Positions 12,052-63,962 of a DNA stretch of 64,000 bases are shown piece after piece. The position numbers and the translations under genes were made by a program. Source of the stretch: Podarcis erhardii (lineage: Eukaryota). The DNA is taken from assembly GCA_964252035.1 (NCBI GenBank), contig OZ176212.1; one strand, written 5' to 3'. The stretch's first letter is position 1, and each line of letters starts with the position of its first letter. The notes beneath the pieces are model-generated. The model was not told the origin of the DNA and did not search any database. It saw only the letters and a list, made by a program, of their open reading frames with translations.

Positions 12052-12094
<43 letters not shown>

Positions 12095-17200: not shown

Positions 17201-19453
17201 TCGGATATTAGTCTGTTTTCTGTTAGTGAAGATGTATACAGTTGGAGATGTCAGCAAATGCAAGGTTAAGTTGTTTCAGTAACGTATATTCTGTTGTAAT
17301 GACACTTAAGGAGGGAGTAGCTGTCACTGAAAGCAATTCTTGAACCATTGCTATGTTAGCATTGTTTCATGAAAAAGTCAGCAACCTGAAATGGAATTAG
17401 TGTATTATGATATTATGACACGGCCTCATCAGATATGGACAGAGAAGTTTCTGAGAATATATCCATGTGAAAGTACACTGGAATGGAGAGAGGAGAAGTA
17501 AGCAAGCAAATGGAAGTGGGGTGATGGTAGGAAACTACTACTTTTTGTACATTTACAGTGGTAGGTAAAGGTAAAGGGACCCCTGACCATTAGGTCCAGT
17601 CGTGGCCGACTCTGGGGTTGCGGCGCTCATCTTGCTTTACTGGCCGAGGGAGCCGGCGTACAGCTTCTGGGTCATGTGGCCAGCATGACTAAGCCGCTTC
17701 TGGCAAACCAGAGCAGCGCACGGAAATGCCGTTTACCTTCCCGCCAGAGCTGTACCTATTTATCTACTTGCACTTTTGACGTGCTTTCGAACTGCTAGGT
17801 TGGCAGGAGCAGGGACCGAGCAACGAAAGCTCACCCCGTTGCGGGGATTCGAACCGCCGACCTTCTGATTGGCAAGCCCTAGGCTCTGTGGTTTAATCAC
17901 AACGCCACCCGAGTCCCTTTTACAGTGGTACACCACTTTAAAAAATACATACTGCAGTTCTGGAAGGAAGCGAAGGCAGTCAATGGCAGGGAATTCATTT
18001 ATTTGGCCTGAGAAATCAATAACCCCAACTAGTTTACTATGGCTTTCACTCTTAAAAGCACCTGCTTATTTATCAAGTGCATGGAGATGTTCTGTATACA
18101 TGGACTGAGGTACCGGGGAGAATAAAGCAAATAGCAATAGGGGGAAAGTTCTGTGTTCCTTTCCATGTTGTGCGATGAGGCTGAGGCTCACTGTGTTGGA
18201 TTCTCTGCCAATATGGTGCTGAAAGGAGCAAATTTGTTAGATAATCAACAAGCTGTTAAGTCCACTCTCATCCTTTCTTCCTTCTGCCTTCTCCCTTCTC
18301 TCCTTCTGGGAGAGATCATTAGGGGGGTTGAAATGGGTGTTCATCAGTACGTGGATGATACCCAGCTCTACCTCTCTTTTAAATCAGAACCAGTGAAGGC
18401 GGTGAATGTTCTGTGTGAGTGTCTGGAGGCAATTGGAGGATGGATGGTGGCTAACGGATTGAGGTTGAATCCTGACAAGACAGAAGTACTGTTTTGGGGG
18501 GACGGGCAGGTGTGGGGGACTCTCTGGTCCTGAATGGGGTAACTGTGCCCCTGAAGGACCAGGTGCGCAGTCTAGGAGTCATTTTGGACTCATAGCTGTC
18601 CATGGAGGCGCAGGTCAATTCTGTGTTCAGGGCAGCTGTCTACCAGCTCCATCTGGTATGCAGGCTGAGACCCTACCTGCCCACAGACTCGCCAAAGTGG
18701 TGCATGCTCTGGTTATCTCCTGCTTGGACTACTGCAATGTGCTCTACGTGGGGCTACCTTTGAAGGTGACCCGGAAACTACAACTAATCCATAATGCGCC
18801 AGCCAGACTGGTGACTGGGAGCAGCCACCGGGACCATATAACACTGGTCCTGAAAGACCTACATTGGCTCCCAGTATGTTTATGAGCACAATTTAAAGTG
18901 TTGGTGCTGGCCTTTAAAGCCCTAAACGACCTCGGCCCAGTATACCTGAAGGAGCATCTCCACTCCCATCATTCAGCCCGGACACTGAGATCTAGCTCCG
19001 AGGGCCTTCTGGCGGTTCCCTCACTGCGAGAGGTGAGGTGACAGAGAACCCAGCAGAGGGCCTTCTCAGTAGTGGTGCCCTCCCATCAGATGTCAAGGAA
19101 ATAAACAACTATCTGACTTTTAGAAGACATCTGAAGGCAACCCTGTATCGGGAAATTTTAAATGTCTAATGTTTTACCATTTTTAATGTGCTGTAAGCTG
19201 CCCAGAGTGGTTGGGGAAACCCAGCCAGATGGGCGGGGTATAAATAATAAAAATATTACTATTATTATTACAGTGGTACCTCAGGATGCGAACGGGATCC
19301 GTTCCGGAGCCCCGTTCGCATCCTGAAGCAAACTCAACCCGTGTCTGGGCGTCACGGGTCGCATTTTGCTGCTTCTGCGCATGCGCGTGACGAAACCATG
19401 GAGCGCAACCCGAAAATACTTAACTTGAAGCACATTTATCCCAAGGTATGACT

Positions 19454-25226: not shown

Positions 25227-25415
25227 TTATAACTTCAAGTTTGTACGATCATGGTATTTTTGGTAGGGGTCATCAATGTACCAGTTTCTTCTTTTCCAGA
25301 AGGAAGATGTCATTTTATCAAGGAGCTTAGACTGTGTTTTATTGCAGAACACATGTTCCCTCAAGCGCCTCCTCCGCCTATAATTTTTTTTCCACAGCCG
25401 TTTCTTGTAACCAGC
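25227..25415 (-). CDS. MRPL35: MRPL35 exon 4
   Basis: [10 protein letters not shown]...DRTNLKL*; AG acceptor at 25416-25417. Confidence 0.96.
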
Positions 25416-28400
25416 CTGTCATCAAAGAGTAAAAGATTTAATTCTTCAAACGTATGAATGGCTATCCACAAAATAAATACATAATCATCACGCAAGTAGA
25501 TTTTCATATAGCCTGTTTTGTCCTTCATTTTTTAATTCTTGCACATTTCCAAGCTACAATTAGAAAAGCAACATCTTTCCCGCACACCGGCATATCATGC
25601 TGTCAAGACAATATCATTCAATGAAGAAAATATTACCCTTCTCCTTAGCCAAAGGCCACAGTGCAATCTGAGAAATCTGTGAATCACAGGTTTTACAGTT
25701 TTCCTTTTTCCTTTTCGCAAGCCGAATTTGATGAGGGTCCTTACTTGCTGATGAAGGATACTTGGGAGCAGTGGTGTTACACTGAAATTTGTATGAAATC
25801 AAGAAAATAGAAAGTTAGATCTAATAGCTGTGACCTGTTTAATTTAGCATTTGACTAATCAGTGTCTCAATAGCACAGAAACCTTAATCCCAAAATCCTT
25901 GAAAGACAAAAACTAAACATCTCAGCAATGCTCCATGAATAGCAGAAGTCACAAAAATGTTCAAATATCTCCTTAAAATTATTTCTGTTATACAAGAATT
26001 CAAACTAGTGCACCGTGGATGAAGAGGACGCTCACCTCCAAAGTATGTTTGTATGATCACACCACAATATTGTTGTTGCTCCCATTAATTCCCACCCTGA
26101 CCTTACCAAAGTGGCAGACTTTGGTACCCTGTGCAAAGCCAAAATTTGCCCACTTCTCTGTGATCAAACCCAATTCTATCCCATGTTCCTTGAACAGTAG
26201 AAATGGGGGAAACGGCATTATATATGGGAGGTGGGAGCATGCATCCCCATAACGGCTCTAGCATGCTCATAGGGGAGAAGGAACTGGGATCTTACTTTGT
26301 TAATACTAACACTAAGCCTCATCAATACCTGCTTCAGAATGCAAATTTGGTGCACTAATACATGCCTACCAACGGGCCAGTGCTACCCCCATAATTAGCT
26401 TCTGGCACAAATAACAATCCAATGAGTAAATAGGAGGGAAAAGAAGAAAGAAAATGGACTAATGCATCCTTGTTTATGTGGCTTTGGCAGCTGCAGTATA
26501 AACAATATTGGAAAATGTACTTTTCCCAAGCTCCAGAAAGCAGAAATGAAGGTGGCGGGGGGGGGGGGGGAGAGGCATCCTGGGGAAACAGCATTAGCCC
26601 TACCCCAAACGACTGAGGAACTGCAGTCACAAGCTTAGCAACCACCAGGGCCTCTTAGGTAGGAGGTTTGAAGACTTGCAAGTACACTTAGAACTCGTAA
26701 GGGAAAAATATTTTTTCTTTAGTGTGTTGTAGTTTCATGCGAATTACTAGTCCCAAACTGAATCAAGCTCAGAGGAATCACCTCTAACTACTGTTGATAT
26801 TTTGACATCTTAGCCAAAGTACGCATATAACCTAATACGTTGTTAAACACACCAGCAATACACTAGGAATCCTCTTACTACTACAGTGGTACCTCTGGTT
26901 ACATACTTAATTCGTTCCGGAGGTCCGTTCTTAACCTGAGACTGTTCTTAACCTGAGGTACCACTTTAGCTAATGGGGCCTCCCGCTGCTGCTGCGCTGT
27001 CGCCGCGCGATTTCTGTTCTCATCCTGAAGCAAAGTTCTTAACCCGAGGTACTTTTTTCTGGGTTAGTAGAGTTTGTAACCTGAAGTGTATGTAACCAGA
27101 GGTACCACTGTATTAGTAAGGAAAGTGGGGCAATAGGGACCTTTCCCAACATTTTACACTATTATCATGCCTATATAATGGAACACATGGTGCTTTTATG
27201 AACAATCAAGCAAATATTAGCTCCAGCTCAAAATCTGTAAAAATCTAAATTTCAACAGTGAAGCGGGGACAACATGCAGGATACAGTTACACATACTTTG
27301 ACTTTTTTATGGTTGGGGACCAGGTAGAAGAGTTTAAAACAAAATCTTTATGGAGGATAATTTTGTTAAATTGTGTCTACCTGTTCAATATTGAGACTGA
27401 ATGCCCATAAGACCCACTTCCAATGGAGAGAAGAGGTTTTCTGGTGGAGATTGTTGATATCTTCTTGTGGCTGATGTGAAGTGAAGACAACCAAGAAATT
27501 GGGCGGATGCTGTAAGAACTATTACTGGCCAAAGGGACCAAAGGGCAGAACGATCTTAAAACCCCTAGAGAAATAAGAGAAAACATTATGAAAAGCAAGC
27601 AAACCATGTATCAAGAAATGGAACCAGGGACTGCCTTCATCTGGCTTCTCCCTGTTCTGGACTTCTCACAGTGAGTGTTGACTATTATGAGACTGATAGA
27701 GGCAGGTGAAGACCCATCTCAGAGCTTACCAGCTTAATTTTCCTCTCACCATGAGAGAGCAGGAGGCAGGCAAAGATTACCTCAGAAGTCAGACCTCACA
27801 GCCTGCTTCTACTACCCTGCCGCCCTAGAAGATTGTCTAGGGCAATCTTGGGTCCCCAGATGTTGGGCTACAACTCCCATCATTCTTAGACAGCATGGTC
27901 GGGGATGATGTAGGTGGCAGTTCAATAACATCTGGGGAGTTCAATAACATCTGGGGACCCAAGATTGAGAAAGGATGGTCTGGGGCTGTCACCTGTCCTG
28001 TGGAAAGGATCCCAGTGGCTTTTAATTGCTCATTGTGGGGTTTTTCTTTAATGTAGTTTAATGTTTCTTATAAATTGCCTTGGAAGGATTAGAATCACAG
28101 AAGGCAGACTATAAATAAATTGATGAAAATAATAATAAAAAATATACTGGTATATTGGGGGTGAAGAGTCAATGTGGAAGGGCAATCAACCAAATGAGTG
28201 TGTGCTAATAGGACTTTATTATTTAAATAATAATAAACCCACTACAAGACTTCATCAGGTCAATGCCCGTTTTCTTTTGTAATCGTTAATAATATGACTT
28301 AAAGTTGGTGAGATTTCTTGCTTACAGCATTTCACATTAAGCGAACTGCTATGATTAGTCAAAGGACTATCACTCAGACACAAGGAAAGTGATGGTCAAT

Positions 28401-29608
28401 TTCCAAAAGCAGCATTGTATCGCAATTATCCTGCAAGATTTCATCACAACCCCCATTCCTGCTTGAAACAGAAGCAACCTTAAGATGAAAGTCTTCAGGT
28501 CCTACTTTTATTCCTGCTCATCATTTTAACCTGCTTCAGCCTCTACTGGGAGCCAATGCTATTATACCTAGGGCCTCCGTTTCTTTTTCTTTCTTTCTTT
28601 TTGCAATAGCTAGTTTAGGGTGATCTCGATTCTAGTGACAGCCAGCCTTTCTTCCAAATTTGGACCCGTGGAGGTAGCTCCAAAATCGGTTGGCAATTGT
28701 GTGGTCCGAGCAGGGTCAAACCAGCAAGTCCCCCATACCACCCTTTAAAGCCCTAAATGGCCTCGGTCCAGTATACCTGAAGGAGCGTCTCCACTCCCAT
28801 CGTTCTGCCCGGACACTGAGGTCCAGCTCTGAGGGCCTTCTGGCTGTGAGAAGCCAAGTTACAGGGGACCATGCAGAGGGCCTTCTCGGTGGTGGCACCC
28901 GCCCTGTGGAACGCCCTCCCACCAGATGTCAAAGAGAAAAACAACTACAGTTGTTTGGTACAGTGGTACCTCGGGTTAAGTACTTAATTCGTTCCGGAGG
29001 TCCGTTCTTAACCTAAAACTGTTCTTAACCTGAAGCACCACTTTAGCTAATGGGTCCTCCTGCTGCTGCCGCACCGCCGGAGTACGATTTCTGTTCTCAT
29101 CCTGAAGCAAAGTACTTAACCTGAGGTACTATTTCTGGGTTAGCGGAGTCTGTAACCTGAAGCGTATGTAACCCGAGGTACCACTGTACCAGACTTTTAG
29201 AAGACATCTGAAGGCAGCCCTGTTTAGGGAAGCTCTTAATGTTTAATAGGTTATTGTACTTTAATATTCTGTTGGAAGCCGCTCAGAGTGGCTGGGGAAA
29301 CCCAGCCAGATGGGCGGGGTATAAATAATAATAATAATAATAATTATTATTATTATTATTTCCTAACCAGGAGCTCCAAGTCCCACCGCCAAGCATCACC
29401 TGCAACAAAATAAATAATCCGAATAATCAAATAGGGCCAACGATTTATTATAGGCTCTCTCTCTCTTCCTGCGTGTTCCTCGCTCGGTGCTAAAGCGAGG
29501 CAACCGTTAAACGACGCCCCCCCCCCTCGTGCGACCCTCAGTCAACGTTGCTTCCCCCGCCCCCCATCACTGACCTGGGAGCCTCCGCGCCGCAGCGAGC
29601 GCCGCCAT
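25227..29608 (-). CDS. MRPL35: Mitochondrial ribosomal protein L35 (bL35m), complete: complement(join(25227..25415,25637..25781,27381..27564,29575..29608)), 183 aa
   Basis: Exons of 34+184+145+189 = 552 nt with GT-AG boundaries; contains [37 protein letters not shown]...[40 protein letters not shown]. Confidence 0.97.
25637..25781 (-). CDS. MRPL35: MRPL35 exon 3
   Basis: 145 nt; [48 protein letters not shown]. Confidence 0.96.
26884..27110. mobile_element. Tc1/mariner MITE in MRPL35 intron 2
   Basis: CAGTGGTACCTCTGGTTAC TIRs, TA flanks. Confidence 0.92.
27381..27564 (-). CDS. MRPL35: MRPL35 exon 2
   Basis: 184 nt, phase 1-2; presequence-like [14 protein letters not shown]...GHSVSILN. Confidence 0.9.
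27835..27980. mobile_element. Degenerate hAT fold-back MITE
   Basis: AATCTTGGGTCCCCAGATG / CATCTGGGGACCCAAGATT inverted arms; boundaries approximate. Confidence 0.6.
28743..29362 (+). mobile_element. 5'-truncated L2 LINE interrupted by a MITE
   Basis: Same family as the 18308 copy; (AAT)/(TAT) tail. Confidence 0.88.
28961..29186. mobile_element. Tc1/mariner MITE nested in L2
   Basis: CAGTGGTACCTCGGGTTA TIRs, TA flanks. Confidence 0.92.
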
Positions 29609-29800
29609 GTTGTCTCCTCAGCCCGCTACGGCATCCACGGAGGGTCAATGCGAAGCGGAAAGCAAAGGCGCGCGCGGAGCGCCCCGCCCCTGGCCCCGCC
29701 CCCTTCGCTGCCTCATCAAGGGAGGGTCGGCTGGATCTGCAGCTGCGCCTCTTCGCAAGCGCGCAGCTGTCGCCCGCTCAGTTCTGAAAGGCTGGCTTTT
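29500..29800 (-). promoter_or_regulatory. MRPL35 CpG-island promoter
   Basis: CpG-rich, GC boxes (GCCCCGCCCC near 29692), YY1-like ACATGGCGGC over the ATG. Confidence 0.75.
29575..29608 (-). CDS. MRPL35: MRPL35 exon 1
   Basis: AACATGGCGGCG start, [11 protein letters not shown](G), GTCAGT donor. Confidence 0.88.
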
Positions 29801-29864
29801 TGCGGTTTTAGTTTGGGAAACGATAGACCCCGAAATCGATTTTTGCGCGTGGCAAATTTGCTGC

Positions 29865-30660
29865 TTCTTTTTTTTTTTTTCTTCAAATTTTTTTTATTGG
29901 TTTTCACAACATTATAAACAAACACACACATAAGGCAAACAAACATAAATCATAGCCTTATTGAAAATTACACTTATTAACATTGTTAGGTGACTTCCTC
30001 GCGTCCCCTTGGTTGAATTTCATTGCATATCCTTTTAACGGTATTCCAAATCACAGTTTTTATAAAATTTAACTTAAACATTAACATCCTTAGATCTTCA
30101 CATTATGAAATTAAACATATTAATGCACCCCTTAACATAAATAAAATCCTAAACCAATTAAGTATCTGCGAGCTGTTGTCAATTAATTTAACTTAACATG
30201 GCAAATTTGCTTCAGTTCGGAGCTATTTTTCGTTAAGAATTAGGAAATTATTCAACCACCCCCCTTCCCTAAATATGCTCTCTGTTACTGTTTTTGAAAA
30301 TGCAATCATTTTTTTTAAAATAGGCCATTCTCACAGCATCTTCCCCTCATGAATCTGGCACGCTTAACCAAATCTGTACTGATGTTTCAGCACTGCGTTC
30401 TTCCCACATTCTTCATTGCGTTTATGGGCGAGGACCTCATCCTTTTATAGCATGTCACGTGAACAGTTTTCCTGGCCTTATTTATCTTCTTTATCTCCCG
30501 CTTGTAATACAGTTTTGCTGAATTTTTATTCTGGAATATGCAAAGTGTGTGGATTGCTAACAAAAAAAAATAAAAAAAATTGGGGGGCAGGGGTCGGGGT
30601 GGTGGTGATATATAGTTATTTGCTCTATTGTTACATGATGTGTTGTTTCCATCAATATTT
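29865..30660 (-). mobile_element. Possible L1-like LINE 3' fragment
   Basis: Plus-strand poly(T) followed by TTTTATTG (minus-strand AATAAA plus poly(A)) and AT-rich LINE-UTR-like sequence; left end clear, right end uncertain. Confidence 0.4.
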
Positions 30661-30816
30661 CCAGTAACTGCTACTGACTCAAAAGCGACAAATATCTGTA
30701 CTGCTGAAGGTTGGCATCTGTCTTGGGAGTCAAGGAAGAGTGCACCTGGCGGGGGCGGGGGCGGGAATCAATCAGTTGGAGAATTACAGTGCCTGCTGTG
30801 GCGGTAGCAGCCGATA

Positions 30817-31166
30817 AAAGGTAAAGGGACCCCTGACCATTAGGTCCAGTCGTGGCCGACGCTGGGGTTGCGGCACTCATCTCGCTTTACTGGCCGAGGG
30901 AGCCGGCGTACAGCTTCCGGGTCATGTGGCCAGTATGACTAAGCCGCTTCTGGCGAACCAGAGCAGCACACGGAAATGCCGTTTACCTTCCCGCCGGAGT
31001 GGTACCTATTTATCTACTTGCACTTTGACGTGCTTTTGAACTGCTAGGTTGGCAGGAGCAGGGACCGAGTAATGGGAGCTCACCCCGTCACGGGGATTCG
31101 AACCGCCAACCTTCTGAATGGCAAGTCCTAGGCTCTGTGGTTTAACCCACAGCACCACCCGTGTTC
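30817..31166 (+). mobile_element. Sauria SINE
   Basis: Full-length copy; 13-bp TSD GTAGCAGCCGATA. Confidence 0.93.
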
Positions 31167-31203
31167 GTAGCAGCCGATAGGGGAGAGATATATTTTCTTG
31201 CAG

Positions 31204-31534
31204 AGACGTGGGTGGCGCCGTGGTCTAAACCACAGAGCCTAGGGGTTGCCGATCGGAAGGTCCGCTGTTCGAATCCCTGCAACGGGGTGAGCTCCCATTC
31301 TTTGGTTCCTGCTCCTGCCCACCTAGCATTTCGAAAGCATGTCAAGTGCAAGTAGATAAATAGGTAGCGCTCCGGCAGGAAGGTAAACGGCGTTTCCGGG
31401 CGCTGCTCTGATTCGCCAGAAGTGGCTTAGTCATGCTGGCCACATGACCCGGAAGCTCCCTCAGCCAATAAAGTGAGATGAGCGCCGCAACCCCAGAGTC
31501 AGCCACGACTGGACCTAATGGTCCCTTTACCTTT
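31204..31534 (-). mobile_element. Sauria SINE, inverted relative to its neighbour
   Basis: Reverse-complement copy with small internal deletions; TSD not clear. Confidence 0.9.
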
Positions 31535-31661
31535 ATACATTTTATGAAATACAAGAAATACAAATTTGTTGTGAGATGGGGCAACTTTTCCCCACACTGT
31601 GTCTGGGCTGGCGATTTGATGTTTATGTATTTATGTATTTGATGTTTATGTATTTGATGTT

Positions 31662-32027
31662 TGAAATATACTCAGAGTCGCAAAGTGATTTCATGCTCTT
31701 TATTCAGCTCATAGTGGTGAGGAGGAATGAATGCCCCCTCAAAGTATCTGCTTTATATACATTATTTACACAATGGGCTGCACATGATTGGCTAATTCCA
31801 GGATTCTACTGTAGGCCAATCAGGTTGTGGATTCACTTCTATCTGGAGCATGATTGGGTGGTTCCTGCTAACCAATCATACTGCTGCATTGTTCTAGGAC
31901 CAATCAGACTGCTGCATTCTGAATCCTATTGTTCTAGGACCAATCAGACTGCTGCCTTTTGGAGCCTATTGTTCTAGGACCAATCAGACTGCTGCAGTTT
32001 GGATCCTATTCAACTCAGTACATAACA
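31662..32027 (-). repeat. 3' LTR, 366 bp
   Basis: No differences from 36231-36596 by eye; follows the PPT. Confidence 0.97.
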
Positions 32028-32040
32028 CCCCTCCCCTCTA
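32028..32040 (-). other. Polypurine tract overlapping the ORF stop codon
   Basis: Minus strand TAGAGGGGAGGGG directly before the 3' LTR TG. Confidence 0.92.
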
Positions 32041-35000
32041 AGTTCCAGTCCTGCCCGGAAGGTCGCATTCATAGTCCTCAAGGTACGCCGGTGGCCTACG
32101 TGTGCGTTGCGGCCTGGGGTGTTCCCTGGTTCGGGGTTCAGGTTCTGGCTCGTGTTCCAAGGATGGGGCTGTTTGGTCTGGCGCAACCGGCTCGCTCAGT
32201 CGTGGTTCTGGTTCCGGTGTCCTTTCGGCCTCGCGGGTCCTCTCTGTATTTACTGATTCTGCCTCTCCTGCTTGCCCCTGCTGCTCTATGGGCCTCACTG
32301 CCCCACTGTTCCCTTGGGACTCCTCTGACCTGTCCTCCTCCTCCTGGTTTTCTCCCGGGAATCGTCGCCGTATCTGGTCGCAGTGGCGGCGCCAGCATTG
32401 CCCCCCATCTGTTAGCACCTCGTACGACACGGGGCCCGTGACCCTGGTGACTGTGGCAGGTACCCATGCAGGGCCTGCCCCAAAATTCTTTGCGTACACT
32501 GGGTCCTGGGCCTCGAAGGTCCGGGGGTTCCTGCCTTCCCCCACCACTACCTCATCCTGAGCTCTATCGGGGTGAAGGCGGTCCAATCTGATTGCAAGGC
32601 GCCGACCCATTAGTAGTTCAGCGGGGCTCCGGCCAGTCGTTGAGCTGGGGGTGCTGTGCTGTGCTAGAAGGAATGTGGCAAGGCGGTACTCCCAATCCCC
32701 TTGCGTCATGCGGCGAAGGGTGTCCTTGGTGGTCCGCACCATGCGTTCTGCTTGGCCATTGGTGGCAGGGTGGAATGGCGCCGAACGGATGTGGCGGATG
32801 GCGTTCTGCACTGTGAAGGTTTGAAATTCTCCTGATGTAAATGCAGTCCCGTTGTCTGAGACGAGAGTGTCAGGGAGCCCGTGGGTTGCAAACAGCCTGC
32901 GTAGTACCCGGATGGCTGCGGACGTAGAAGTGGACGGTACCAGTGCGACTTCCAGCCATTTGGTGTAGGAGTCCACCACTATGAAGAATGTTTTCCCCTG
33001 AAAGGGGCCAGCGAAGTCCACATGCAGGCGTGACCATGGTGCTCGGGCGGACTCCCAGGACTGGACTGGGGCCCTTGGGGGATCTGGGCGGGATTCCTGG
33101 CAGGCCTGGCAGTGTTTGACCCAGGCCTCTATCTCTCCGTCGATCCCCGGCCACCACACATAACTCCTGGCAAGGGCCTTCATTCTTACTACCCCTGGGT
33201 GTGTCTCGTGTAGGGCTGTGAGGACCCTTTTGCGGAGGGGCTGGGGAACAACGACCCTGCTTCCCCATAACAGGCACCCCTTGTGGGCTGACAGTTCATG
33301 TTTGCGGGTTGTGTAGCCGGCGAATTCTGGCCCGGGGGTGCGGCTGGGCCATCCCCTCCACACCCAGTCCAGGACCCGGGAGATGACCCTATCTTTCTTG
33401 GAATGGTGTGCAACTTCTTGTGCCTGAATGGGGCGGTCAGGAAGCAGCTCCAGGCTCATAACCTCTTGTGCAGGTGCTGGGTCGGGGCCTGTTTCCGGTA
33501 GTGGTAGCCTGCTGAGGGCGTCTGCATGGCCCATCGCCTTTCCAGGGCGGTGAATCAGTGCATACTGGTAGCTGGCAAGGAAAATTGACCACCTGAGGAC
33601 GCGAGGAGACAGCACTTGGGGGGTCTGCTTTTCGGGGGCAAACAAGCCAAGCAACGGCTTGTGGTCAGTCACCACGGTGAAGGGCCGCCCGTACAAGAAA
33701 TCATGGAATTTTTTTACTCCCTTCACGATTGCCAGACCCTCCTTGTCGATTTGCGAGTAGTTCCGCTCGGTTTCGTTGAGTGTCTGGGAAAAGTATGCTA
33801 CCGGTACCTCTCTTCCATCCGGGAGTTGGTGTCCCAGGACAGCGCCGATGCCATAGGGCGAGGCGTCGCATGCTAGCACCACCGGCAGCCTCTCGTCGAA
33901 GTGTGCCAAGACCGAGTTTGAGACAAGCAAGTCCTTGACTGCCTGGAATGCGGCCTCCTGGCGCTGGCCCCACACCCAAGGGGCCCGCTTGTCCAGGAGT
34001 CTGTGTAGGGGCTCCGCTACCGCCGCCTTGTGGGGAAGGAAGGAATGGTAAAAGTTCAATAATCCCAAGAAGGCCTGAAGTTCAGTCTTGTTCTTGGGCG
34101 CTGGGGCATCACAAATGGCCCGTACCTTGTCCCCAGTCGGGTGAACCCCTTCTGCATCCACCATAAATCCCAGAAAGTCCACTTGAGACACTCCTAGTAG
34201 ACATTTTTCCCGCTTCACCTTGAGACCCGCCATCTGGAAACGGTGCAGAACAGTGCGGAGGCGGTCCTCAAACTCCTCTGGTGTGGGCCCGGCAATCAAC
34301 ACATCATCAAAGAAGGGGGTGACACCAGGAATCCCTTTAAGGAGAGAGTCCATTAGATTCTGGAATATGCCTGGTGCCACGCTGACCCCGAATTGCAGCC
34401 GCTTTACCCTGAACGCTCCTCTGTGCGTCACAATTGTCTGTGCCTCTGCTGTGGCCTCATCTACTGGCAGCTGTTGATATGCTTGGGCCAAGTCCAGCTT
34501 GCCAAAAATTTTCGACCCAGCCAGGGTGGCAAGGACATGGCTGACCACTGGCACTGGGTATGCATGGGCCATGAGGGCCTTGTTTATGGTACATTTGTAG
34601 TCTGCGCAGATGCGGACCGAACCATTAGGCTTGACGGGTGTGACGATTGGGGTTTCCCAGGGGGCATTAGGCACCGGCTCCAGCACTCCTTGCTCCACGA
34701 GTCGGTCCAATTCCTCGTCTATACGGGGTTTCAGGGCGAATGGGACCCGGCGGGCCTTGAGCCTGACTGGTCGTACTGCGGGGTCAAGCTGTAGAGCAAT
34801 GGGGGGGCCCGTATACTGTCCCAATTTCCCATCGAAAACCCCCGGAAACTCCTTGCATATGGCGTCCACGTCCACTTGTAAGCTCATGTGGTTCACCCCG
34901 GTGATGGCTAGTCCCAGTGGTCCAAACCATGCCAACCCCAGTAAGCTAATGTAGGGGCCCTTGACCACAAGCAAGTCCAGTTGCCGCGTCCGCCCTCGGT

Positions 35001-36105
35001 ATTGCACCCTGAAGGTCCCCACCCCCATTGTGGGGACCTTACGTTTCTGGAAGTCCCGGAGGGTGAATGGGGCCGGCCTGAGTTTGGGACCCCCAGTAGG
35101 ACACAGTTTCCTTAAGGTCCTTGCCGAGATTATGGATAGAGTTGAACCCGTGTCAAGCTCCATGCGGCATGGGGCCCCCTCTATCTGTACCTCTACATAA
35201 ATTTTCTCTACGTTGGGGTGGGGCAACTGGTATACCTGGAAGTCTGTGAGCTCCGTCGAGTTGCCTTGGTGCGTTGGGCCCCGGGACCTGGGGCTCTTGG
35301 ATTGGTCATCTGATGCCTGGCTTTGGGTGGGCCGAGCCCGACACACCCAGGCGATGTGTCCCAATTTTCTGCACTGCCTGCACTCTGCGTTGCGGAAACG
35401 GCAGGTCCTCCTCTCGTGACTTTCTCCACAGCTTGCGCAGTTCCCTCCTTCTCGTCGAGGCAGCTGTGGTATGTGGGCTGCTTGAGTGCGCTGCTGTACT
35501 CGGTGCACCTCCTCCCTGTCGGATCCCGAGTCGTTGGTGAGGTCTTCGTGGTGGACCCTCGGTTGGGACGGCTGGCTCAGCCGTGCCTCTTGCGTCGACC
35601 TCTCAGCAGCTTCCGTTGCCAGGGCCTCCTCCAGAGCGACCTGGAACGTTAGGTTCTTCTTAGCGTAGAGGCGTCGTTGCAGCTTCTCATCCTTCAGGCC
35701 ACCGACGAGGCGGTCACGAAGCATGTTCTCCAGCTCTGAGAAGTTGCAGAACCGGGCAGCTTGGCGGAGAGAGGTCACAAACCCAGTTATGGTTTCCCCA
35801 GGGGCTTGCCGCTTTGCGTAGAAGGCATTTCGACGAGCCACCACTGAGGGCTGTGGCGAAAAGTGCCCCTTCAGCTGTTCCATTATTGTTTTGTATGGAA
35901 CAGTAGCGACGTCTTCAGGCGCAAGGAGAGCCCGGGCGATTTCAAATGTCTCCTCTCCGCAGACGCTGAAGAATATTGCCCTCTTCTTGGCGTCTTCTTC
36001 ATCGGTGACCCCTTTGGCTTCTAGGAGGAAGGTGAAACGGGAGGCGTACGCTTCCCAGTCTCCAGATTCTGGGTTGAATGGCGAGAAGCTGCTGTCAGTT
36101 GCCAT
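32038..36105 (-). CDS. Gag-Pol polyprotein, 1355 aa
   Basis: Two zinc knuckles (CASCGESHERRTC, CRQCRKLGHIAWVC), protease LDTGS, RT (LDLAQAYQQL, FGVSVAPGIFQ, FFDD), RNase H (CDASPYG, TDHKPL, ADALSRL), integrase HHCC and D-D-E (LHVDF, SDNG, AERMV), SH3-like C-terminal domain; no stops or frameshifts. Confidence 0.98.
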   Translation of the reverse strand: MATDSSFSPFNPESGDWEAYASRFTFLLEAKGVTDEEDAKKRAIFFSVCGEETFEIARALLAPEDVATVPYKTIMEQLKGHFSPQPSVVARRNAFYAKRQAPGETITGFVTSLRQAARFCNFSELENMLRDRLVGGLKDEKLQRRLYAKKNLTFQVALEEALATEAAERSTQEARLSQPSQPRVHHEDLTNDSGSDREEVHRVQQRTQAAHIPQLPRREGGNCASCGESHERRTCRFRNAECRQCRKLGHIAWVCRARPTQSQASDDQSKSPRSRGPTHQGNSTELTDFQVYQLPHPNVEKIYVEVQIEGAPCRMELDTGSTLSIISARTLRKLCPTGGPKLRPAPFTLRDFQKRKVPTMGVGTFRVQYRGRTRQLDLLVVKGPYISLLGLAWFGPLGLAITGVNHMSLQVDVDAICKEFPGVFDGKLGQYTGPPIALQLDPAVRPVRLKARRVPFALKPRIDEELDRLVEQGVLEPVPNAPWETPIVTPVKPNGSVRICADYKCTINKALMAHAYPVPVVSHVLATLAGSKIFGKLDLAQAYQQLPVDEATAEAQTIVTHRGAFRVKRLQFGVSVAPGIFQNLMDSLLKGIPGVTPFFDDVLIAGPTPEEFEDRLRTVLHRFQMAGLKVKREKCLLGVSQVDFLGFMVDAEGVHPTGDKVRAICDAPAPKNKTELQAFLGLLNFYHSFLPHKAAVAEPLHRLLDKRAPWVWGQRQEAAFQAVKDLLVSNSVLAHFDERLPVVLACDASPYGIGAVLGHQLPDGREVPVAYFSQTLNETERNYSQIDKEGLAIVKGVKKFHDFLYGRPFTVVTDHKPLLGLFAPEKQTPQVLSPRVLRWSIFLASYQYALIHRPGKAMGHADALSRLPLPETGPDPAPAQEVMSLELLPDRPIQAQEVAHHSKKDRVISRVLDWVWRGWPSRTPGPEFAGYTTRKHELSAHKGCLLWGSRVVVPQPLRKRVLTALHETHPGVVRMKALARSYVWWPGIDGEIEAWVKHCQACQESRPDPPRAPVQSWESARAPWSRLHVDFAGPFQGKTFFIVVDSYTKWLEVALVPSTSTSAAIRVLRRLFATHGLPDTLVSDNGTAFTSGEFQTFTVQNAIRHIRSAPFHPATNGQAERMVRTTKDTLRRMTQGDWEYRLATFLLAQHSTPSSTTGRSPAELLMGRRLAIRLDRLHPDRAQDEVVVGEGRNPRTFEAQDPVYAKNFGAGPAWVPATVTRVTGPVSYEVLTDGGQCWRRHCDQIRRRFPGENQEEEDRSEESQGNSGAVRPIEQQGQAGEAESVNTERTREAERTPEPEPRLSEPVAPDQTAPSLEHEPEPEPRTREHPRPQRTRRPPAYLEDYECDLPGRTGT

Positions 36106-36211
36106 TCTGAGTTCCTTGTGTCCCGGAGCTGAAGCCTGGATACACGGTGCGAGGCAGCGGTGCGGCAGGTGGCGGTGCTGCGGTGCTGTGTGTGGCAGTC
36201 AGCTCAGCGGG

Positions 36212-36229
36212 ATCCCACCTTCGTCGCCA
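36212..36229 (-). other. Primer-binding site, tRNA-Ser(GCT)-type
   Basis: Minus strand TGGCGACGAAGGTGGGAT, 1 nt inside the 5' LTR; complementary to the remembered vertebrate tRNA-Ser(GCT) 3' end ...ATCCCAYCYTCGTCG-CCA. Confidence 0.85.
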
Positions 36230-36230
36230 G

Positions 36231-36596
36231 TGAAATATACTCAGAGTCGCAAAGTGATTTCATGCTCTTTATTCAGCTCATAGTGGTGAGGAGGAATGAA
36301 TGCCCCCTCAAAGTATCTGCTTTATATACATTATTTACACAATGGGCTGCACATGATTGGCTAATTCCAGGATTCTACTGTAGGCCAATCAGGTTGTGGA
36401 TTCACTTCTATCTGGAGCATGATTGGGTGGTTCCTGCTAACCAATCATACTGCTGCATTGTTCTAGGACCAATCAGACTGCTGCATTCTGAATCCTATTG
36501 TTCTAGGACCAATCAGACTGCTGCCTTTTGGAGCCTATTGTTCTAGGACCAATCAGACTGCTGCAGTTTGGATCCTATTCAACTCAGTACATAACA
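36231..36596 (-). repeat. 5' LTR, 366 bp
   Basis: Minus-strand TATA (TATATAAA, ~36321-36328), AATAAA (36268-36273), three 40-bp tandem units, seven CCAAT/ATTGG. Confidence 0.97.
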
Positions 36597-36649
36597 ATGT
36601 TATACCGCTCGATTGCAGAAAAACACACACCCTCAAAGGGCACTTCACT

Positions 36650-36768
36650 AGTTGCAAAGTTGGAAAAAGACCACAAGGGACATCTATAGCTCAAACCCTG
36701 CAATGCAGCAATCGAACCCACGACCCTGATATTAAGATTCCCATGCTCTACCGACTGAGCTATCAAGC
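36650..36768 (-). mobile_element. tRNA-Lys-derived SINE with CR1-like tail, degenerate
   Basis: TAGCTCAGTCGGTAGAGCATGGGAATCTTAATATCAGGGTCGTGGGTTCGA closely follows tRNA-Lys(CTT), then CTGCATTGCAGGG...TTCCAACT in place of an acceptor stem. Confidence 0.75.
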
Positions 36769-36929
36769 GTCTTTCTTAAAATACTGGCAAACTTCCCCAT
36801 AACCAGCAGCCACCGCCCCAGTCCAGCAGCAGGAGAAAGAACACAGCCTCTTTTTCCTAAGGACCCAGAAACACACAGACAACGAAAGGCTGCGCCTACT
36901 CTATATTTGTTGCTCTATATGCTGCCTAG

Positions 36930-37800
36930 GTAGGCGGGCTGACGGCGGCTCGCCTTCCGATTGGCCGCCGCGGCACAGAAGCGCTCGCTCGCTCGCTCGC
37001 TCGCTCGCGCACCGCCCGCCCCCTCCGTCCGGATTGGCGAGCCGCAAGCCCCGCCTCTTCAGGCGCTCGGCCTCAGAGCGATTGCGCGCAAAGCGGGGAG
37101 GGGCGGAGACAAGACGCGCATGCGCGCAAGCACGCACGCAGCGTAAGGCCCGAGGCTCGCTTTGCCGCCGCTTTCCGTCGAGCGCCTCCCTCAGCGAACC
37201 GGCGTCATGCTGCGGGCCTGTCACCGCGCGGGGAGCACAGCGGCTCAGGTGAGGGGAAGCAGAAAGGCGTGAGGGGGGGGGCGGGAACGAACGGGCGGCG
37301 GGAGCCTCCTCGCGCGCGTGACGGAGGCGAAGGGCGCCCGTGAGCCCGCGCCTGGCCCGTGAGGAGGAGGGAAGACCCGCGAAGGAGCCCATTGGCTGCC
37401 CATATTGGGGGTGGGGGAGCAGCCGGGGGCGTCGGCAGCCGGGACGACTCGCGTGGTTTGTCTTCTTTTCATGAATAAATCCAAGACTACATTTCCCATC
37501 ATGCACTGCGGGACGCTTGGGTCTGGTCTCTATATTTCTATCCGTATCTCTAGCTAGATACGTGGCTGCAAGTCTAACCGGGGCTTTGGTAGTTCTTCAT
37601 TGCCTCAGAGGCGGGCGGAAGAGAGCGAAACCGGAGTCCAAGACACGCTCGTGAGAACGCGTGCTCGCGTGCAGAGGCGGTGCTGTGGATGGGCGCTCCC
37701 AGTTGCCGTAGGGTCGCCACCGGAGAGAGGGCTGCTGGGTCTTGTAGGCTCCTTGGATGTCACCTCTAAACCCAGAAACAGGGCCTCCACGGGTTTCCCT
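36930..37800 (+). promoter_or_regulatory. IMMT CpG-island promoter and first intron
   Basis: CpG-dense; ATTGG boxes near 36960 and 37032, GC box near 37100, NRF1 palindrome GCGCATGCGC at 37116-37125, ZNF143/SBS-type GACTACATTTCCCATCATGCA at 37485-37505. Confidence 0.82.
37207..37248 (+). CDS. IMMT: IMMT exon 1
   Basis: [20 protein letters not shown] donor. Confidence 0.92.
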
Positions 37801-40800
37801 CACTACTTCTTGGGGTTTTCACGTGAAGCAGCGAACTGGCTTCCAGAGGTGTGTCCTTTGGCAAGCAGCGCTGATCCATTATTTTTTTTTAAAGCCGGCA
37901 AGTCCCTTCTCATAGCTGGTAGAAGGACATGACCTTGCTTTAATTATTCTGTGTCCTAAAGATTACACCGTTTAATATCTGCGGCGAAAAGTGTGCTGGA
38001 AAGTCTGCTTCCTCATACATATTAAGCAGGCTTTGGTGGCAGAAAACATTATGCAATTTCTCTTTGTTTTGCAGGCCACAGTGTCAAAAAGAGATTCTAG
38101 GGCTGCGCCTGGTTGCAGAGCAAGGCCTGGCTGCCCCACCTTCTTCTGTCATTATCCATTTAGAGATCTTGAAACTACTATTCTAATTAACTAGTAACAG
38201 TTTTGGAAAGTGTAGTGGCTTTGGAGCTTCATACTTGCTGGGTTTTTCTTCAAAGCTTAAAATTATTTTTTTGCAATCAGGTATACCTACCATTTCTATC
38301 ATGGAACTCAAGGTGGCTTTCAATGATAAAATATACAATGCAAACAGCCCGTGTTTATCATTTAAGAAGCAGCATCCAAAAATGCCTGTTGAAACAAAGT
38401 CTTGCTGGAAAGCATGCAGCAGTTGGGCCAGATAAACTTCTGTCAGGGTAGGTTCTAGATTCTGGACAGCATAACGGCAAAACAAAACAAAAACCCAAAA
38501 TTTTCTTGTGCACACACACCACATTTCTAATGTTTGTGGGGGACTCAGAGCAGGGTCTCAGAGGTAGATCTTAATGCCTGGGGAGTTTCCTTTCTGATGG
38601 GTTATTATTGAAATAAACTGGTCCTAGACTTATGCCTTCTAAAGTTAACAATGATAATTGCACTTTGAATTGAGGCCGGAGACAAATTGGTAACCAGTAA
38701 AGATGACACTGGATCATTATAATATCACACACACACACACACATTTTCTGCGGTAATGTGAATTCAGAGCACCTTATAAGCTTTAAGATAATGGCGAACA
38801 ATAAAACAGTGTACCTGTATTAAAAGGGGAAAAACACATGAAAAAAATGCATCCAAAAGAACAGCTTAAAGTGGTAGTGAAAAAAGACACAATAGCATAC
38901 TTAAAACTTTCCAAGATGTAAGCCCTGCTGAATATAGTGTCATTAACTGCTGAGTAAACATATGTAGGATTATGCCGATGAAGACCTTGCCATAAGAACA
39001 CCCACTGAAATCAGCCCTGTTTTTAACATTCTAAAAATGGACAATGTGGTGTTCCATCAAGCAGTCGGGGTGCCACAATTGAAGAGCCCCACTTGCTCGC
39101 TTATTCCTGCCCACTGAATTCTGGTCTTTAGATTAGTGGAGCAAGAGCTTTGGTGGGTGTTCTTAAAGTGTTCTTTTTGTGAATCCTGTTAGAAAAGGAA
39201 CTCAAAGATGAAGTTGGAATGAAGCCCCAGATTGCTTATTGCAGAGTTGTTCTTTTTTATTTATTTAGAAAGAAGGCAAAAAGGGAAATTCAAAGAGACA
39301 GCTGTGAAAATATCTGGGACTGTGACCAAAGCTGTAATCTTATATGCGCTTAATAGCAGTGAGCCCCATTCAGCATAATGGGTCGTACGTCTGAATAAAT
39401 ATGCATAGGATTGTACTGTAAAACATAGCCAGTTTAGACATACTTTGGTGTAACTCATGTTAAATGTTAGTGGGACTTCTGTAAATGTGCATGTGGCTGC
39501 ATATGTCATTTTGTTGAATTTTCTGATCTTCTCTAGAAAGTACTCAAAATATGTTTTTAAACACTGTAAGTAACTTTCATATGTTTTGCTCTTGCTGTTC
39601 AATTACAAGCTAATCTTACCATCTGGTCTATAATCATTTGTACAGTTCAGCAGAGAGAGAAGTTCAGGCCTGTGCACTATAAAGTTGCATATAACTGAAT
39701 GAATTGTAAAGTGAGATTATTGCATTTCTGTATTCTAGGTTTCTGGGGCACCCTTGGGGTACATTGGGCTGGAAAATACAAGCTATTAAACAACAGAGCT
39801 TAGCGTGCAGAGTAAAAGCCTTCACGCAAATTGACCAAATACTTTATTGTGTGACTATTTTGAAGCCATCAAAGTCTCACAACTATATGCCAATTATGAC
39901 CTTTTGAGCGTGGGTGTTCAAATTCTGGATGCCAATCTGTCTGGCATTTTCAAAATTATGTTTTCAATTGATGGAAACTCCTGAGCTAGGGTGTGTCATG
40001 GAACACAGACTTCCAGAGTTTTCTATTTCCTAACTTCACATATGGTTTTAATGAAGGTTTTGGGCATCTGTTCTTCCTGTGGAAAATCAGAGTTATGCCA
40101 ACACTTGTAAAGCAATATTACAATACTGTGGGGATTTTTTTTTTATTAAAAAAAAGGTTTTTCCACAGAAAGATATTTGCTTGTTAGTGGCAAACCTTTT
40201 TAGATATATTAAAAATGATTGCCAGAATATCAGGGGCATGTGTGAATATTCTATATAACATTGCAGCAGCTCAGTGAAGGGAATTCTAATTTCAGTAAGT
40301 TGTTGCAGTTTTTAGCTAATTAAGTTTTAAAACTAACCTGTGTCTGACTGAATTTAATATTGCTATTAATATTTAGATGCCAATATTTACAACCCACAAT
40401 CCTGCAAGCTTTTTGTGTGTGTATCGATTTAGGTTCTGTAAACTGATTCCAATATTGTTCAGAGTGACTCAATTTATCAATCGTTTTGAAAGAGATCTCT
40501 TGAAAAGAGATAATGTTATATCATGATTGCAAGACTTCTTCTCAATAGTAAATATGGTTCATAAGCTTTTTAAGATCGTGAAATGAGGGATAAAATGTAA
40601 TCTGCTTTGTATAATTTTCAGTTAGCGTGTCTGGATCTGAGGTTACAGTATTTCATGATCTTGCAATGGAGTTAGTTAGATAAATACACTATTCAGTTTG
40701 TTTAAGTGTATTAATGCAACTGTATCAGTAGTCACTTGCTTGGTTACCTGTGGCAAATAAAAATGGCTTCCAGATGACCAGACAAGGTAGTTTTATTAAA

Positions 40801-63598: not shown

Positions 63599-63962
63599 GG
63601 GACACGGGTGGCGCTGTGGGTAAAACCTCAGCGCCTAGGACTTGCCGATCGTATGGTCGGCGGTTCGAATCCCCGCGGCGGGGTGAGCTCCTGTCGTTCG
63701 GTCCCAGCTCCTGCCCATCTAGCAGTTCGAAAGCACCCCTAAGTGCAAGTAGATAAATAGGGACCGCTTTATAGCGGGAAGGTAAACGGCGTTTCCGTGT
63801 GCTGTGCTGGTGCTGGCTCGCCGGAGCAGCTTCGTCACGCTGGCCACGTGACCCGGAAGTGTCTGCGGACAGCGCTGGCTCCCAGCCTCTAGAGTGAGAT
63901 GAGCGCACAACCCTAGAGTCTGTCAAGACTGGCCCATATGGGCAGGGGTACCTTTACCTTTT
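63599..63962 (-). mobile_element. Sauria SINE, different subfamily
   Basis: Diagnostic head GGTACCCCTGCCCATATGGGCCAGTC; TSD TATG(T/A)CATAAAG. Confidence 0.9.

What the first reader, a model, noticed from the sequence alone, without database searches (positions are those of the whole stretch)
31662..36596. Intact, apparently very young Mag-like Gypsy retrotransposon
Seen: two 366-bp LTRs with no differences by eye, a perfect ATGTT TSD, an 18-nt tRNA-Ser-type PBS, a PPT and a 1355-aa ORF with all catalytic domains and no disabling mutations. Established: LTRs are identical at insertion. Inferred: this is a recent, possibly polymorphic insertion of an active and perhaps uncatalogued lizard family.
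Basis: partly seen in the sequence, partly recalled or inferred. Interest (0 to 1): 0.75.

Follow-up and report, generated by a model that had tools for sequence, protein, structure and literature searches.

The report
Intact young Gypsy retrotransposon, wall lizard
This is a complete, recently inserted copy of an ordinary Gypsy-type jumping gene. Its family is shared by wall lizards and their relatives, and this copy sits between the promoters of two mitochondrial housekeeping genes. It is real and well preserved, but it is a common kind of thing in lizard genomes.

Summary
Every structural claim holds. There are two 366-bp LTRs with 366/366 identity, an ATGTT target-site duplication, a tRNA-like PBS, a purine tract and one uninterrupted 1355-aa gag-pol ORF. 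The ORF carries two zinc knuckles, protease, RT, RNase H and integrase, and all catalytic residues that could be aligned to Ty3 (RT, RNase H, integrase) are kept. The element is on the minus strand.

It is a Ty3/Gypsy element without chromodomain or env. Mag-lineage membership fits several indirect features but could not be tested against reference sequences.

The family is already in public protein sets as gene models called "K02A2.6-like". Partial Podarcis raffonei models are 98.5% identical. Zootoca vivipara models are 89–94% identical to this copy and 98–99.8% identical to each other. So this is a lacertid-wide family that was recently active.

Zero LTR differences bound the age only to under about 1.6–8 My, depending on the assumed rate.

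The copy lies between the divergent MRPL35 and IMMT promoters, 611 bp upstream of the IMMT ATG. Other first-reader notes list further young Gypsy insertions elsewhere in this genome.

Verdict: a new member of a known kind, of modest interest.

The parts
31657..31661 (.). Left copy of the 5-bp target-site duplication, ATGTT
   Evidence: lies at the end of a TGTTTATGTATT-like simple repeat (31620-31661)
31662..32027 (-). 3' LTR in the element's sense, 366 bp, TG...CA. Carries AATAAA at 31699-31704 and TATA at 31754-31759.
   Evidence: 366/366 identical to the other LTR
32028..32039 (-). Polypurine tract AGAGGGGAGGGG. It abuts the 3' LTR and overlaps the stop codon.
32038..36105 (-). Single gag-pol ORF, 1355 aa plus stop, with no frameshift or internal stop
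35341..35439 (-). Nucleocapsid with two zinc knuckles: C223-X2-C-X3-H-X4-C235 and C242-X2-C-X4-H-X4-C255
   Evidence: positions from the alignment
34924..35196 (-). Aspartic protease (aa 304-394, DTG motif)
   Evidence: gag-asp_proteas / Asp_protease_2, below the Pfam cut-off
34162..34623 (-). Reverse transcriptase core (aa 495-648). FFDD aligns to the YLDD of Ty3.
33568..33972 (-). RNase H (aa 712-846)
32041..33249 (-). Integrase: HHCC zinc finger (aa 953-1007), DDE core (1023-1113), GPY/F-like module, and a variable acidic/proline-rich tail
32071..32115 (-). Basic motif near the C-terminus, RPQRTRRPPAYLEDY. It is conserved (RRSQRxRRxPxYLxD[YF]) in squamate relatives that are only about 60% identical overall.
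36212..36229 (-). Primer-binding site TGGCGACGAAGGTGGGAT, one base after the 5' LTR
   Evidence: the tRNA-Ser assignment is from memory only
36231..36596 (-). 5' LTR in the element's sense, 366 bp. It has 7 CCAAT/ATTGG boxes, 3 of them in a 40-bp tandem repeat (about 36457-36579), TATATAAA at 36323-36328, AATAAA at 36268-36273, and only one CpG.
36597..36601 (.). Right copy of the target-site duplication, ATGTT
37207..37248 (+). Context: coding part of IMMT/MIC60 exon 1 ([14 protein letters not shown] plus GT donor) inside a CpG island at about 36900-37450. The ATG is 611 bp from the element.
   Evidence: Mitofilin Pfam hit further downstream
29575..29608 (-). Context: coding part of MRPL35 exon 1 ([11 protein letters not shown] plus GT donor) inside a CpG island at about 29300-29900. 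The later exons are at 25598-25798 and 25230-25418.

Best explanation
This is a full-length, coding-intact Ty3/Gypsy LTR retrotransposon on the minus strand. It has no chromodomain and no env, and most probably belongs to the Mag lineage. It comes from a family shared by lacertid lizards, and it inserted recently into the roughly 2.5-kb spacer between the divergently transcribed MRPL35 and IMMT genes of what is probably a Podarcis genome.

Inferred mechanism, the standard LTR-retrotransposon cycle (not shown here):
1. Transcription starts about 25-30 nt downstream of the TATATAAA box in U3 of the 5' LTR, under a U3 that holds seven CCAAT (NF-Y-type) boxes.
2. The transcript is polyadenylated after the AATAAA of the 3' LTR.
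3. The single gag-pol ORF is translated without a frameshift and cut by its own protease.
4. Minus-strand DNA synthesis is primed by a tRNA (Ser-type) at the PBS, and plus-strand synthesis from the purine tract.
5. The integrase makes a 5-bp staggered cut, which gives the ATGTT duplication.

Shown: the complete anatomy, the intact catalytic motifs, the identical LTRs, and recently amplified relatives in other lacertids.

Inferred: that this copy, or the family in this genome, is still mobile.
For: Identical 366-bp LTRs with identity ending exactly at the TG/CA ends. A 5-bp TSD. PBS and PPT in the right places. A 1355-aa ORF with PR-RT-RH-IN order. Alignment to Ty3 Gag-Pol 7q5b at E=1.6e-87, with the RT, RNase H and integrase catalytic residues kept; the protease DTG motif is present in the translation. 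Internal CpG o/e is 0.62 against 0.43 for the rest of the window, so there is little decay.

Family: the best hit is Zootoca XP_060126817.1 (90% identity, 1356 aa, cluster of 133). P. raffonei partial models are 98.4-98.6% identical. Zootoca copies are 98-99.8% identical to each other. The copy falls in a lacertid clade with 100 support, inside a squamate clade and far from chromodomain-bearing elements.

Mag-lineage features:
- Two CCHC arrays (PMC2577118).
- About 4.9 kb, one ORF, Ser PBS and 5-bp TSD, as in the Culex Mag families (PMC3286476).
- The 'K02A2.6-like' label is linked to the Mag C-clade and Steamer-like elements (PMC8905726; PMC9210306).
- The LTR 5' end TGTTATGT fits the Mag A and Mag C motifs (PMC3601003).
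Against: No reads or other genomic copies from this genome could be examined, so copy number, polymorphism and expression are unknown. Zero LTR differences over 366 bp allow an age of up to several million years. Mag membership was not tested against named reference sequences. The LTR 3' end (ATATTTCA) fits the published Mag C motif AYANAACA only in part, and the LTR is longer than the 139-304 bp listed for the Culex Mag elements. The tRNA-Ser assignment of the PBS rests on memory.
Confidence: 0.88

Rival explanations
1. This is an older, fixed insertion. Its LTRs look identical because of gene conversion between them, or simply because 366 bp is too short to have picked up a difference. On this reading it is not 'very young' and not polymorphic.
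For: The 95% age bound from 0/366 differences is 1.6-8 My, depending on the assumed rate. Nothing here tests polymorphism.
Against: A 4068-nt ORF with no disabling change, a perfect TSD, and a high retained CpG content (o/e 0.62 against 0.43 in the host) all point the same way as the LTRs. Gene conversion would not protect the ORF.
Confidence: 0.2
2. This is an assembly artefact. The element was placed here, or its LTRs were homogenised, by assembly or polishing of a multi-copy repeat.
For: The family is multi-copy in related genomes, and no reads could be laid on the junctions.
Against: An exact 5-bp TSD flanks exact TG...CA ends. Removing the element and one TSD copy leaves a clean, continuous target. 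There are no N runs in the window. A misplaced repeat would not create a TSD.
Confidence: 0.04
3. It is a Gypsy element of some lineage other than Mag: an unnamed vertebrate or nematode-related clade that merely shares Mag-like features.
For: No named Mag, SURL, Jule or Steamer sequence could be put in the tree. The squamate clade groups with Trichuris and Trichinella elements and is separate from the fish 'K02A2.6-like' clade. The LTR 3' end does not fit the Mag C motif well.
Against: Two CCHC arrays, the Ser-type PBS, the 5-bp TSD, the size and the single ORF all match published Mag-lineage descriptions. The K02A2.6-like label is tied to the Mag C-clade in the literature. There is no chromodomain, no env, no CHCC gag motif and no IN-before-RT order, so the other named clades are excluded.
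Confidence: 0.15

Closest known systems
Lacertid 'uncharacterized protein K02A2.6-like' gene models (e.g. Zootoca vivipara XP_060126817.1; Podarcis raffonei XP_053257964.1 and XP_053239995.1)
   Same: The same retrotransposon family. The proteins are 1356 against 1355 aa with the same domain order. Identity is 90% overall to Zootoca and 98.5% over about 630 aa to P. raffonei.
   Different: Those are automatic host-gene annotations, not described as transposons. This exact protein is not in the collection. Gag and the C-terminal tail diverge much more than RT, RNase H and integrase do.
Mag lineage of Ty3/Gypsy: Mag of Bombyx mori, SURL, Jule of Xiphophorus, Steamer of Mya arenaria (Mag C-clade)
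   Same: About 5 kb with short LTRs. Gag-pol with PR-RT-RH-IN order and no env or chromodomain. Two CCHC arrays, a Ser-type PBS and a 5-bp TSD. The LTR starts TGTTATGT.
   Different: No direct phylogenetic test was possible. The LTR is longer (366 bp), partly because of a 3x40-bp repeat. The 3' LTR end fits the Mag C motif only in part. In my tree the fish K02A2.6-like elements are not the nearest relatives of the squamate clade.
Ty3 of Saccharomyces cerevisiae (structures 7q5b and 4ol8)
   Same: RT, RNase H and integrase are homologous (E=1.6e-87) and all catalytic residues align. Ty3 also makes a 5-bp TSD (from memory).
   Different: Ty3 has separate gag and pol frames joined by a frameshift and targets Pol III start sites (from memory). 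This element has one ORF and lies between two Pol II CpG-island promoters. ARAGORN found no tRNA gene in the window.

Membership tests
Ty3/Gypsy (Metaviridae) LTR retrotransposon | Domain order PR-RT-RNase H-IN in pol | tested here: met
   Pfam positions 304-394, 495-648, 712-846 and 953-1113; collinear alignment to Ty3 Gag-Pol
Ty3/Gypsy (Metaviridae) LTR retrotransposon | Direct LTRs with TG...CA ends, a TSD, a PBS after the 5' LTR and a PPT before the 3' LTR | tested here: met
Mag lineage (clades A/B/C) | RT-RH-IN phylogeny groups the element with Mag, SURL, Jule or Steamer reference sequences | not testable with these tools
   No named reference sequence could be obtained. A second word search seeded with P0044 returned only unnamed and fish 'K02A2.6-like' proteins. 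The only link is through the literature: the K02A2.6-like annotation is tied to the C-clade.
Mag lineage (clades A/B/C) | Nucleocapsid with two CCHC arrays (Llorens 2008, PMC2577118) | tested here: met
   C223..C235 (CX2CX3HX4C) and C242..C255 (CX2CX4HX4C)
Mag lineage (clades A/B/C) | About 4.5-5.3 kb, 1-2 ORFs, PBS for tRNA-Ser or tRNA-Leu, mostly 5-bp TSD (Culex Mag families, PMC3286476) | tested here: inconclusive
   Met: 4935 bp, one ORF, 5-bp TSD. Not verified: the PBS tRNA identity, which is 17/18 to vertebrate tRNA-Ser-GCU from my memory only. The LTR, at 366 bp, is longer than the listed 139-304 bp.
Mag lineage (clades A/B/C) | [quoted passage not shown] | tested here: inconclusive
   The 5' end TGTTATGT fits both motifs. 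The 3' end ATATTTCA fits only at A-Y-A-N and the final CA.
Chromoviruses | Chromodomain at the integrase C-terminus | tested here: not met
   No PF00385 hit. The tail is acidic and proline-rich. Chromodomain-bearing hits form a separate clade with 100 support.
Errantiviruses / endogenous retroviruses | A third (env) ORF | tested here: not met
   The internal region is 4203 bp, and the gag-pol ORF fills 4068 bp of it. The ORF ends inside the PPT.

The most novel reading that the evidence does not exclude
The squamate 'K02A2.6-like' Gypsy lineage that includes this active lacertid family did not descend vertically from the fish Mag elements. Instead it entered squamates, or left them, by horizontal transfer involving trichinellid parasitic nematodes. 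In the trees, Trichuris and Trichinella elements are the nearest outgroups of the squamate clade, while the fish elements fall elsewhere.
Probability: 0.1. Interest if true: 0.6.

Novelty: new member of a known kind. Interest (0 to 1): 0.27.

Why it matters
It adds a well-preserved example to the known picture that squamate genomes keep many LTR-retrotransposon families alive. It also shows that dozens of 'K02A2.6-like' gene models in lacertid annotations are copies of one Gypsy family.

The local interest is its position. A promoter-bearing LTR with seven CCAAT boxes sits 0.6 kb upstream of the IMMT start codon and 2 kb upstream of the MRPL35 start codon. If the insertion is polymorphic, it would be a natural test of how a new LTR affects a bidirectional housekeeping promoter region.

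None of this changes what is known about how such elements work.

Tried and rejected
There is therefore no test of polymorphism, copy number or expression.
No DNA of related copies could be fetched, so I could not compare LTRs across species or check the orthologous empty site.
- Named Mag, SURL, Jule or Steamer proteins: not recovered by either word search. The papers of Bowen & McDonald 1999, Michaille 1990 and Arriagada 2014 are not held.
- tRNA gene next to the insertion (Ty3-like targeting): rejected. ARAGORN found none in the window, and Rfam found no tRNA hit in 28000-39000. The tRNA-like stretch at about 36690-36770 is probably a SINE head. Rfam gave only one chance-level hit.
- Gag family: only a sub-threshold PNMA hit (E=0.044).
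- Env, chromodomain, frameshift: none.
- The first tree run with the mixture model timed out. FastTree and LG+G4 quick trees were used instead.
- The exhaustive representative search, structure prediction and complex prediction were not used, because the protein is not open to doubt.
Full report
**Observation.** The direct-repeat search found two 300+-nt copies 4569 bp apart. Aligning 31642-32047 with 36211-36616 showed that every one of the 366 positions from TG (31662 / 36231) to CA (32027 / 36596) is identical. The flanks are unrelated. ATGTT stands immediately outside both ends, at 31657-61 and 36597-601. The left copy is the end of a TGTTTATGTATT-like simple repeat that follows SINE-like repeats at 30817-31560. 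No further LTR copy is in the window.

The only long ORF is on the minus strand: 32038-36105, 1355 aa, with no interruption. So the element's sense strand is the minus strand. The right LTR is its 5' LTR and the left LTR is its 3' LTR.

In sense orientation the 5' LTR is followed by one base and then TGGCGACGAAGGTGGGAT (36229-36212). The 3' LTR is preceded by AGAGGGGAGGGG (32039-32028), which overlaps the TAG stop. The assignment of the PBS to tRNA-Ser rests on my recollection of the vertebrate tRNA-Ser-GCU 3' end (17 of 18 matches). I could not verify it with a tool.

**Coding capacity.** Pfam finds, in order:
- an aspartic protease (aa 304-394, weak hit);
- RVT_1 (aa 495-648);
- RNase H (aa 712-846);
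- the integrase H2C2 finger (aa 953-1007);
- the integrase core (aa 1023-1113).

Against solved structures the best match is the Ty3 Gag-Pol of the intasome structure 7q5b (E=1.6e-87, aa 439-1167), followed by Ty3 RT/RNase H 4ol8. The printed alignment shows FFDD opposite the YLDD of Ty3. The RNase H acidic residues, the integrase HHCC and the D, D, E residues are all in place.

Gag has two zinc knuckles (aa 223-235 and 242-255) and only a sub-threshold PNMA-like hit. There is no room for env: 4068 of the 4203 internal bases are gag-pol. There is no chromodomain.

The integrase tail is a variable acidic, proline-rich stretch. It ends in a basic motif, RPQRTRRPPAYLEDY. This motif is conserved as RRSQRxRRxPxYLxD[YF] in squamate relatives that are otherwise only about 60% identical, and it is recognisable in some invertebrate relatives. 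Its role (a nuclear localisation signal or a tethering peptide) is a guess.

**LTR anatomy (sense strand).**
- U3 holds seven CCAAT/ATTGG boxes with the extended CCAATCA form. Three of them lie in a 40-bp tandem triplication.
- TATATAAA is at LTR positions 267-274 (window 36321-36328).
- AATAAA is at LTR positions 324-329 (window 36268-36273).
- By inference, R is about 50 nt and U5 is very short.
- The LTR contains a single CpG. The internal region has 223 CpGs (o/e 0.62, GC 59%), against o/e 0.43 and GC 43% for the rest of the window.

**Family and host.** The word search returned squamate proteins named 'uncharacterized protein K02A2.6-like'. The best hit is Zootoca vivipara XP_060126817.1 (90% identity, 1356 aa), which represents a 90% cluster of 133 members from Zootoca and Podarcis raffonei. 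This exact protein is not in the collection.

Pairwise BLASTP shows:
- two partial P. raffonei models are 98.4-98.6% identical to the window protein over about 630 aa, and 99.4% identical to each other;
- nine Zootoca models are 98-99.8% identical to each other and 89-94% identical to the window protein.

So the family is shared by lacertids and has amplified recently and separately in at least Zootoca, and probably in Podarcis.

The genome is most likely a Podarcis.

**Lineage.** In a FastTree tree of 62 proteins and an IQ-TREE (LG+G4, SH-aLRT) tree of 42:
- the window protein sits in a lacertid clade (support 100);
- that clade lies inside a squamate clade of lizards, geckos and snakes;
- the successive outgroups are Trichuris suis, Trichinella and a moth;
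- the fish 'K02A2.6-like' proteins (Acipenser, Fundulus, Pygocentrus, Tachysurus) fall in a different clade with unnamed metagenome proteins and ticks;
- all of these are separated, with support 100, from the chromodomain-bearing elements used as outgroup.

I could not obtain any named Mag, SURL, Jule or Steamer sequence, so membership in the Mag lineage is not tested directly. The indirect evidence is consistent:
- Mag elements usually have two CCHC arrays (PMC2577118).
- The Mag families of Culex are 4.5-5.3 kb, have one or two ORFs, mostly a tRNA-Ser PBS and mostly 5-bp TSDs, whereas the Mdg1 and Mdg3 families have 4-bp TSDs (PMC3286476).
- The 'K02A2.6-like' label has been tied to Steamer-like elements of the Mag C-clade (PMC8905726; PMC9210306).
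- The LTR 5' end TGTTATGT fits the published Mag A and Mag C motifs, but the 3' end fits only in part (PMC3601003).

I put Mag-lineage membership at about 0.8.

**Age.** With 2 x 366 sites and no difference, the likelihood gives a median of 0.4-1.9 My and a 95% upper bound of 1.6-8 My. This holds for assumed neutral rates of 2.5e-9 to 0.5e-9 per site per year (the rates are my assumptions). The intact 4-kb ORF, the perfect TSD and the retained CpGs point the same way and tighten the bound somewhat. The insertion is therefore young, but the data do not show that it is 'very' young or polymorphic.

**Context.** The element lies between two CpG islands.
- Right island (about 36900-37450): holds IMMT/MIC60 exon 1 (ATG at 37207, [16 protein letters not shown] donor). 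A Mitofilin C-terminal exon lies at 58363-58989.
- Left island (about 29300-29900): holds MRPL35 exon 1 on the minus strand (ATG at 29608, [13 protein letters not shown] donor). The last two coding exons are at 25598-25798 and 25230-25418.

The 5' LTR end is 611 bp from the IMMT ATG, and the element points away from IMMT. The 3' LTR is about 2 kb upstream of the MRPL35 ATG and in the same orientation as MRPL35. So read-out transcripts towards MRPL35 are conceivable, but this is an inference and was not tested. ARAGORN found no tRNA gene in the window, and Rfam found no tRNA hit in 28000-39000 around the element.

**What could not be done.**
I did not resend trimmed letters.

Consequently there are no reads, no other genomic copies, no orthologous-site test and no expression data.

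**Verdict.** This is a real, intact, young Gypsy element of a lacertid-wide family that was recently active. It is most probably of the Mag lineage, and it sits in a bidirectional housekeeping promoter region. This is a new member of a known kind. Other first-reader notes report further young Gypsy insertions elsewhere in the same genome, which fits the known richness of active retrotransposons in squamates and lowers the surprise.

Noticed in passing
window 58363-58989 (+): The C-terminal ~200 aa of IMMT/MIC60 (Pfam Mitofilin positions 427-614) are encoded in one stop-free stretch, preceded by an acceptor-like ttacag. As I recall, the human gene splits these residues over several exons. This may be loss of 3' introns in this lineage, or a retrocopy fragment inside the gene.
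   Followed up: no
proteins P0035 (Trichuris suis) and P0059 (Trichinella) against the squamate clade; trees: Elements of trichinellid parasitic nematodes (46-48% identity) are the nearest outgroups of the whole squamate 'K02A2.6-like' clade, closer than the fish elements (about 40%). This is a possible horizontal-transfer lead, but taxon sampling was limited to word-sharing hits.
   Followed up: partly
window 32071-32115 (-), aa 1331-1345: A basic motif near the C-terminus of the integrase, RRSQRxRRxPxYLxD[YF], is conserved across squamate relatives although the ~100 aa before it are not alignable. A similar basic motif is seen in a tick element and in an unnamed ENA element. Its function is unknown (nuclear import or a tether?).
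   Followed up: partly
window 36231-36596 and 31662-32027: The LTR has only one CpG in 366 bp (o/e 0.06), although it carries seven CCAAT boxes and a TATA box. The coding region has 223 CpGs.
   Followed up: no
window 10437-13400, 17560-17870, 30817-31560, 56086-56450, 61773-62131, 63599-63768: There are many copies, in both orientations, of a 150-320-bp interspersed repeat at 85-96% identity (SINE-like). The Gypsy element inserted at the simple-repeat tail of one of them.
   Followed up: no
window 36680-36775 (-): A tRNA-like stretch (GATAGCTCAGTCGGTAGAGCA...GGTTCGATT) lies about 100 bp from the insertion. Neither ARAGORN nor Rfam calls it a tRNA. It is probably the head of a tRNA-derived SINE.
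   Followed up: yes
window 18153-18533 (+): A short ORF with a weak RVT_1 hit (E=1.8e-5), probably a fragment of another retroelement.
   Followed up: no
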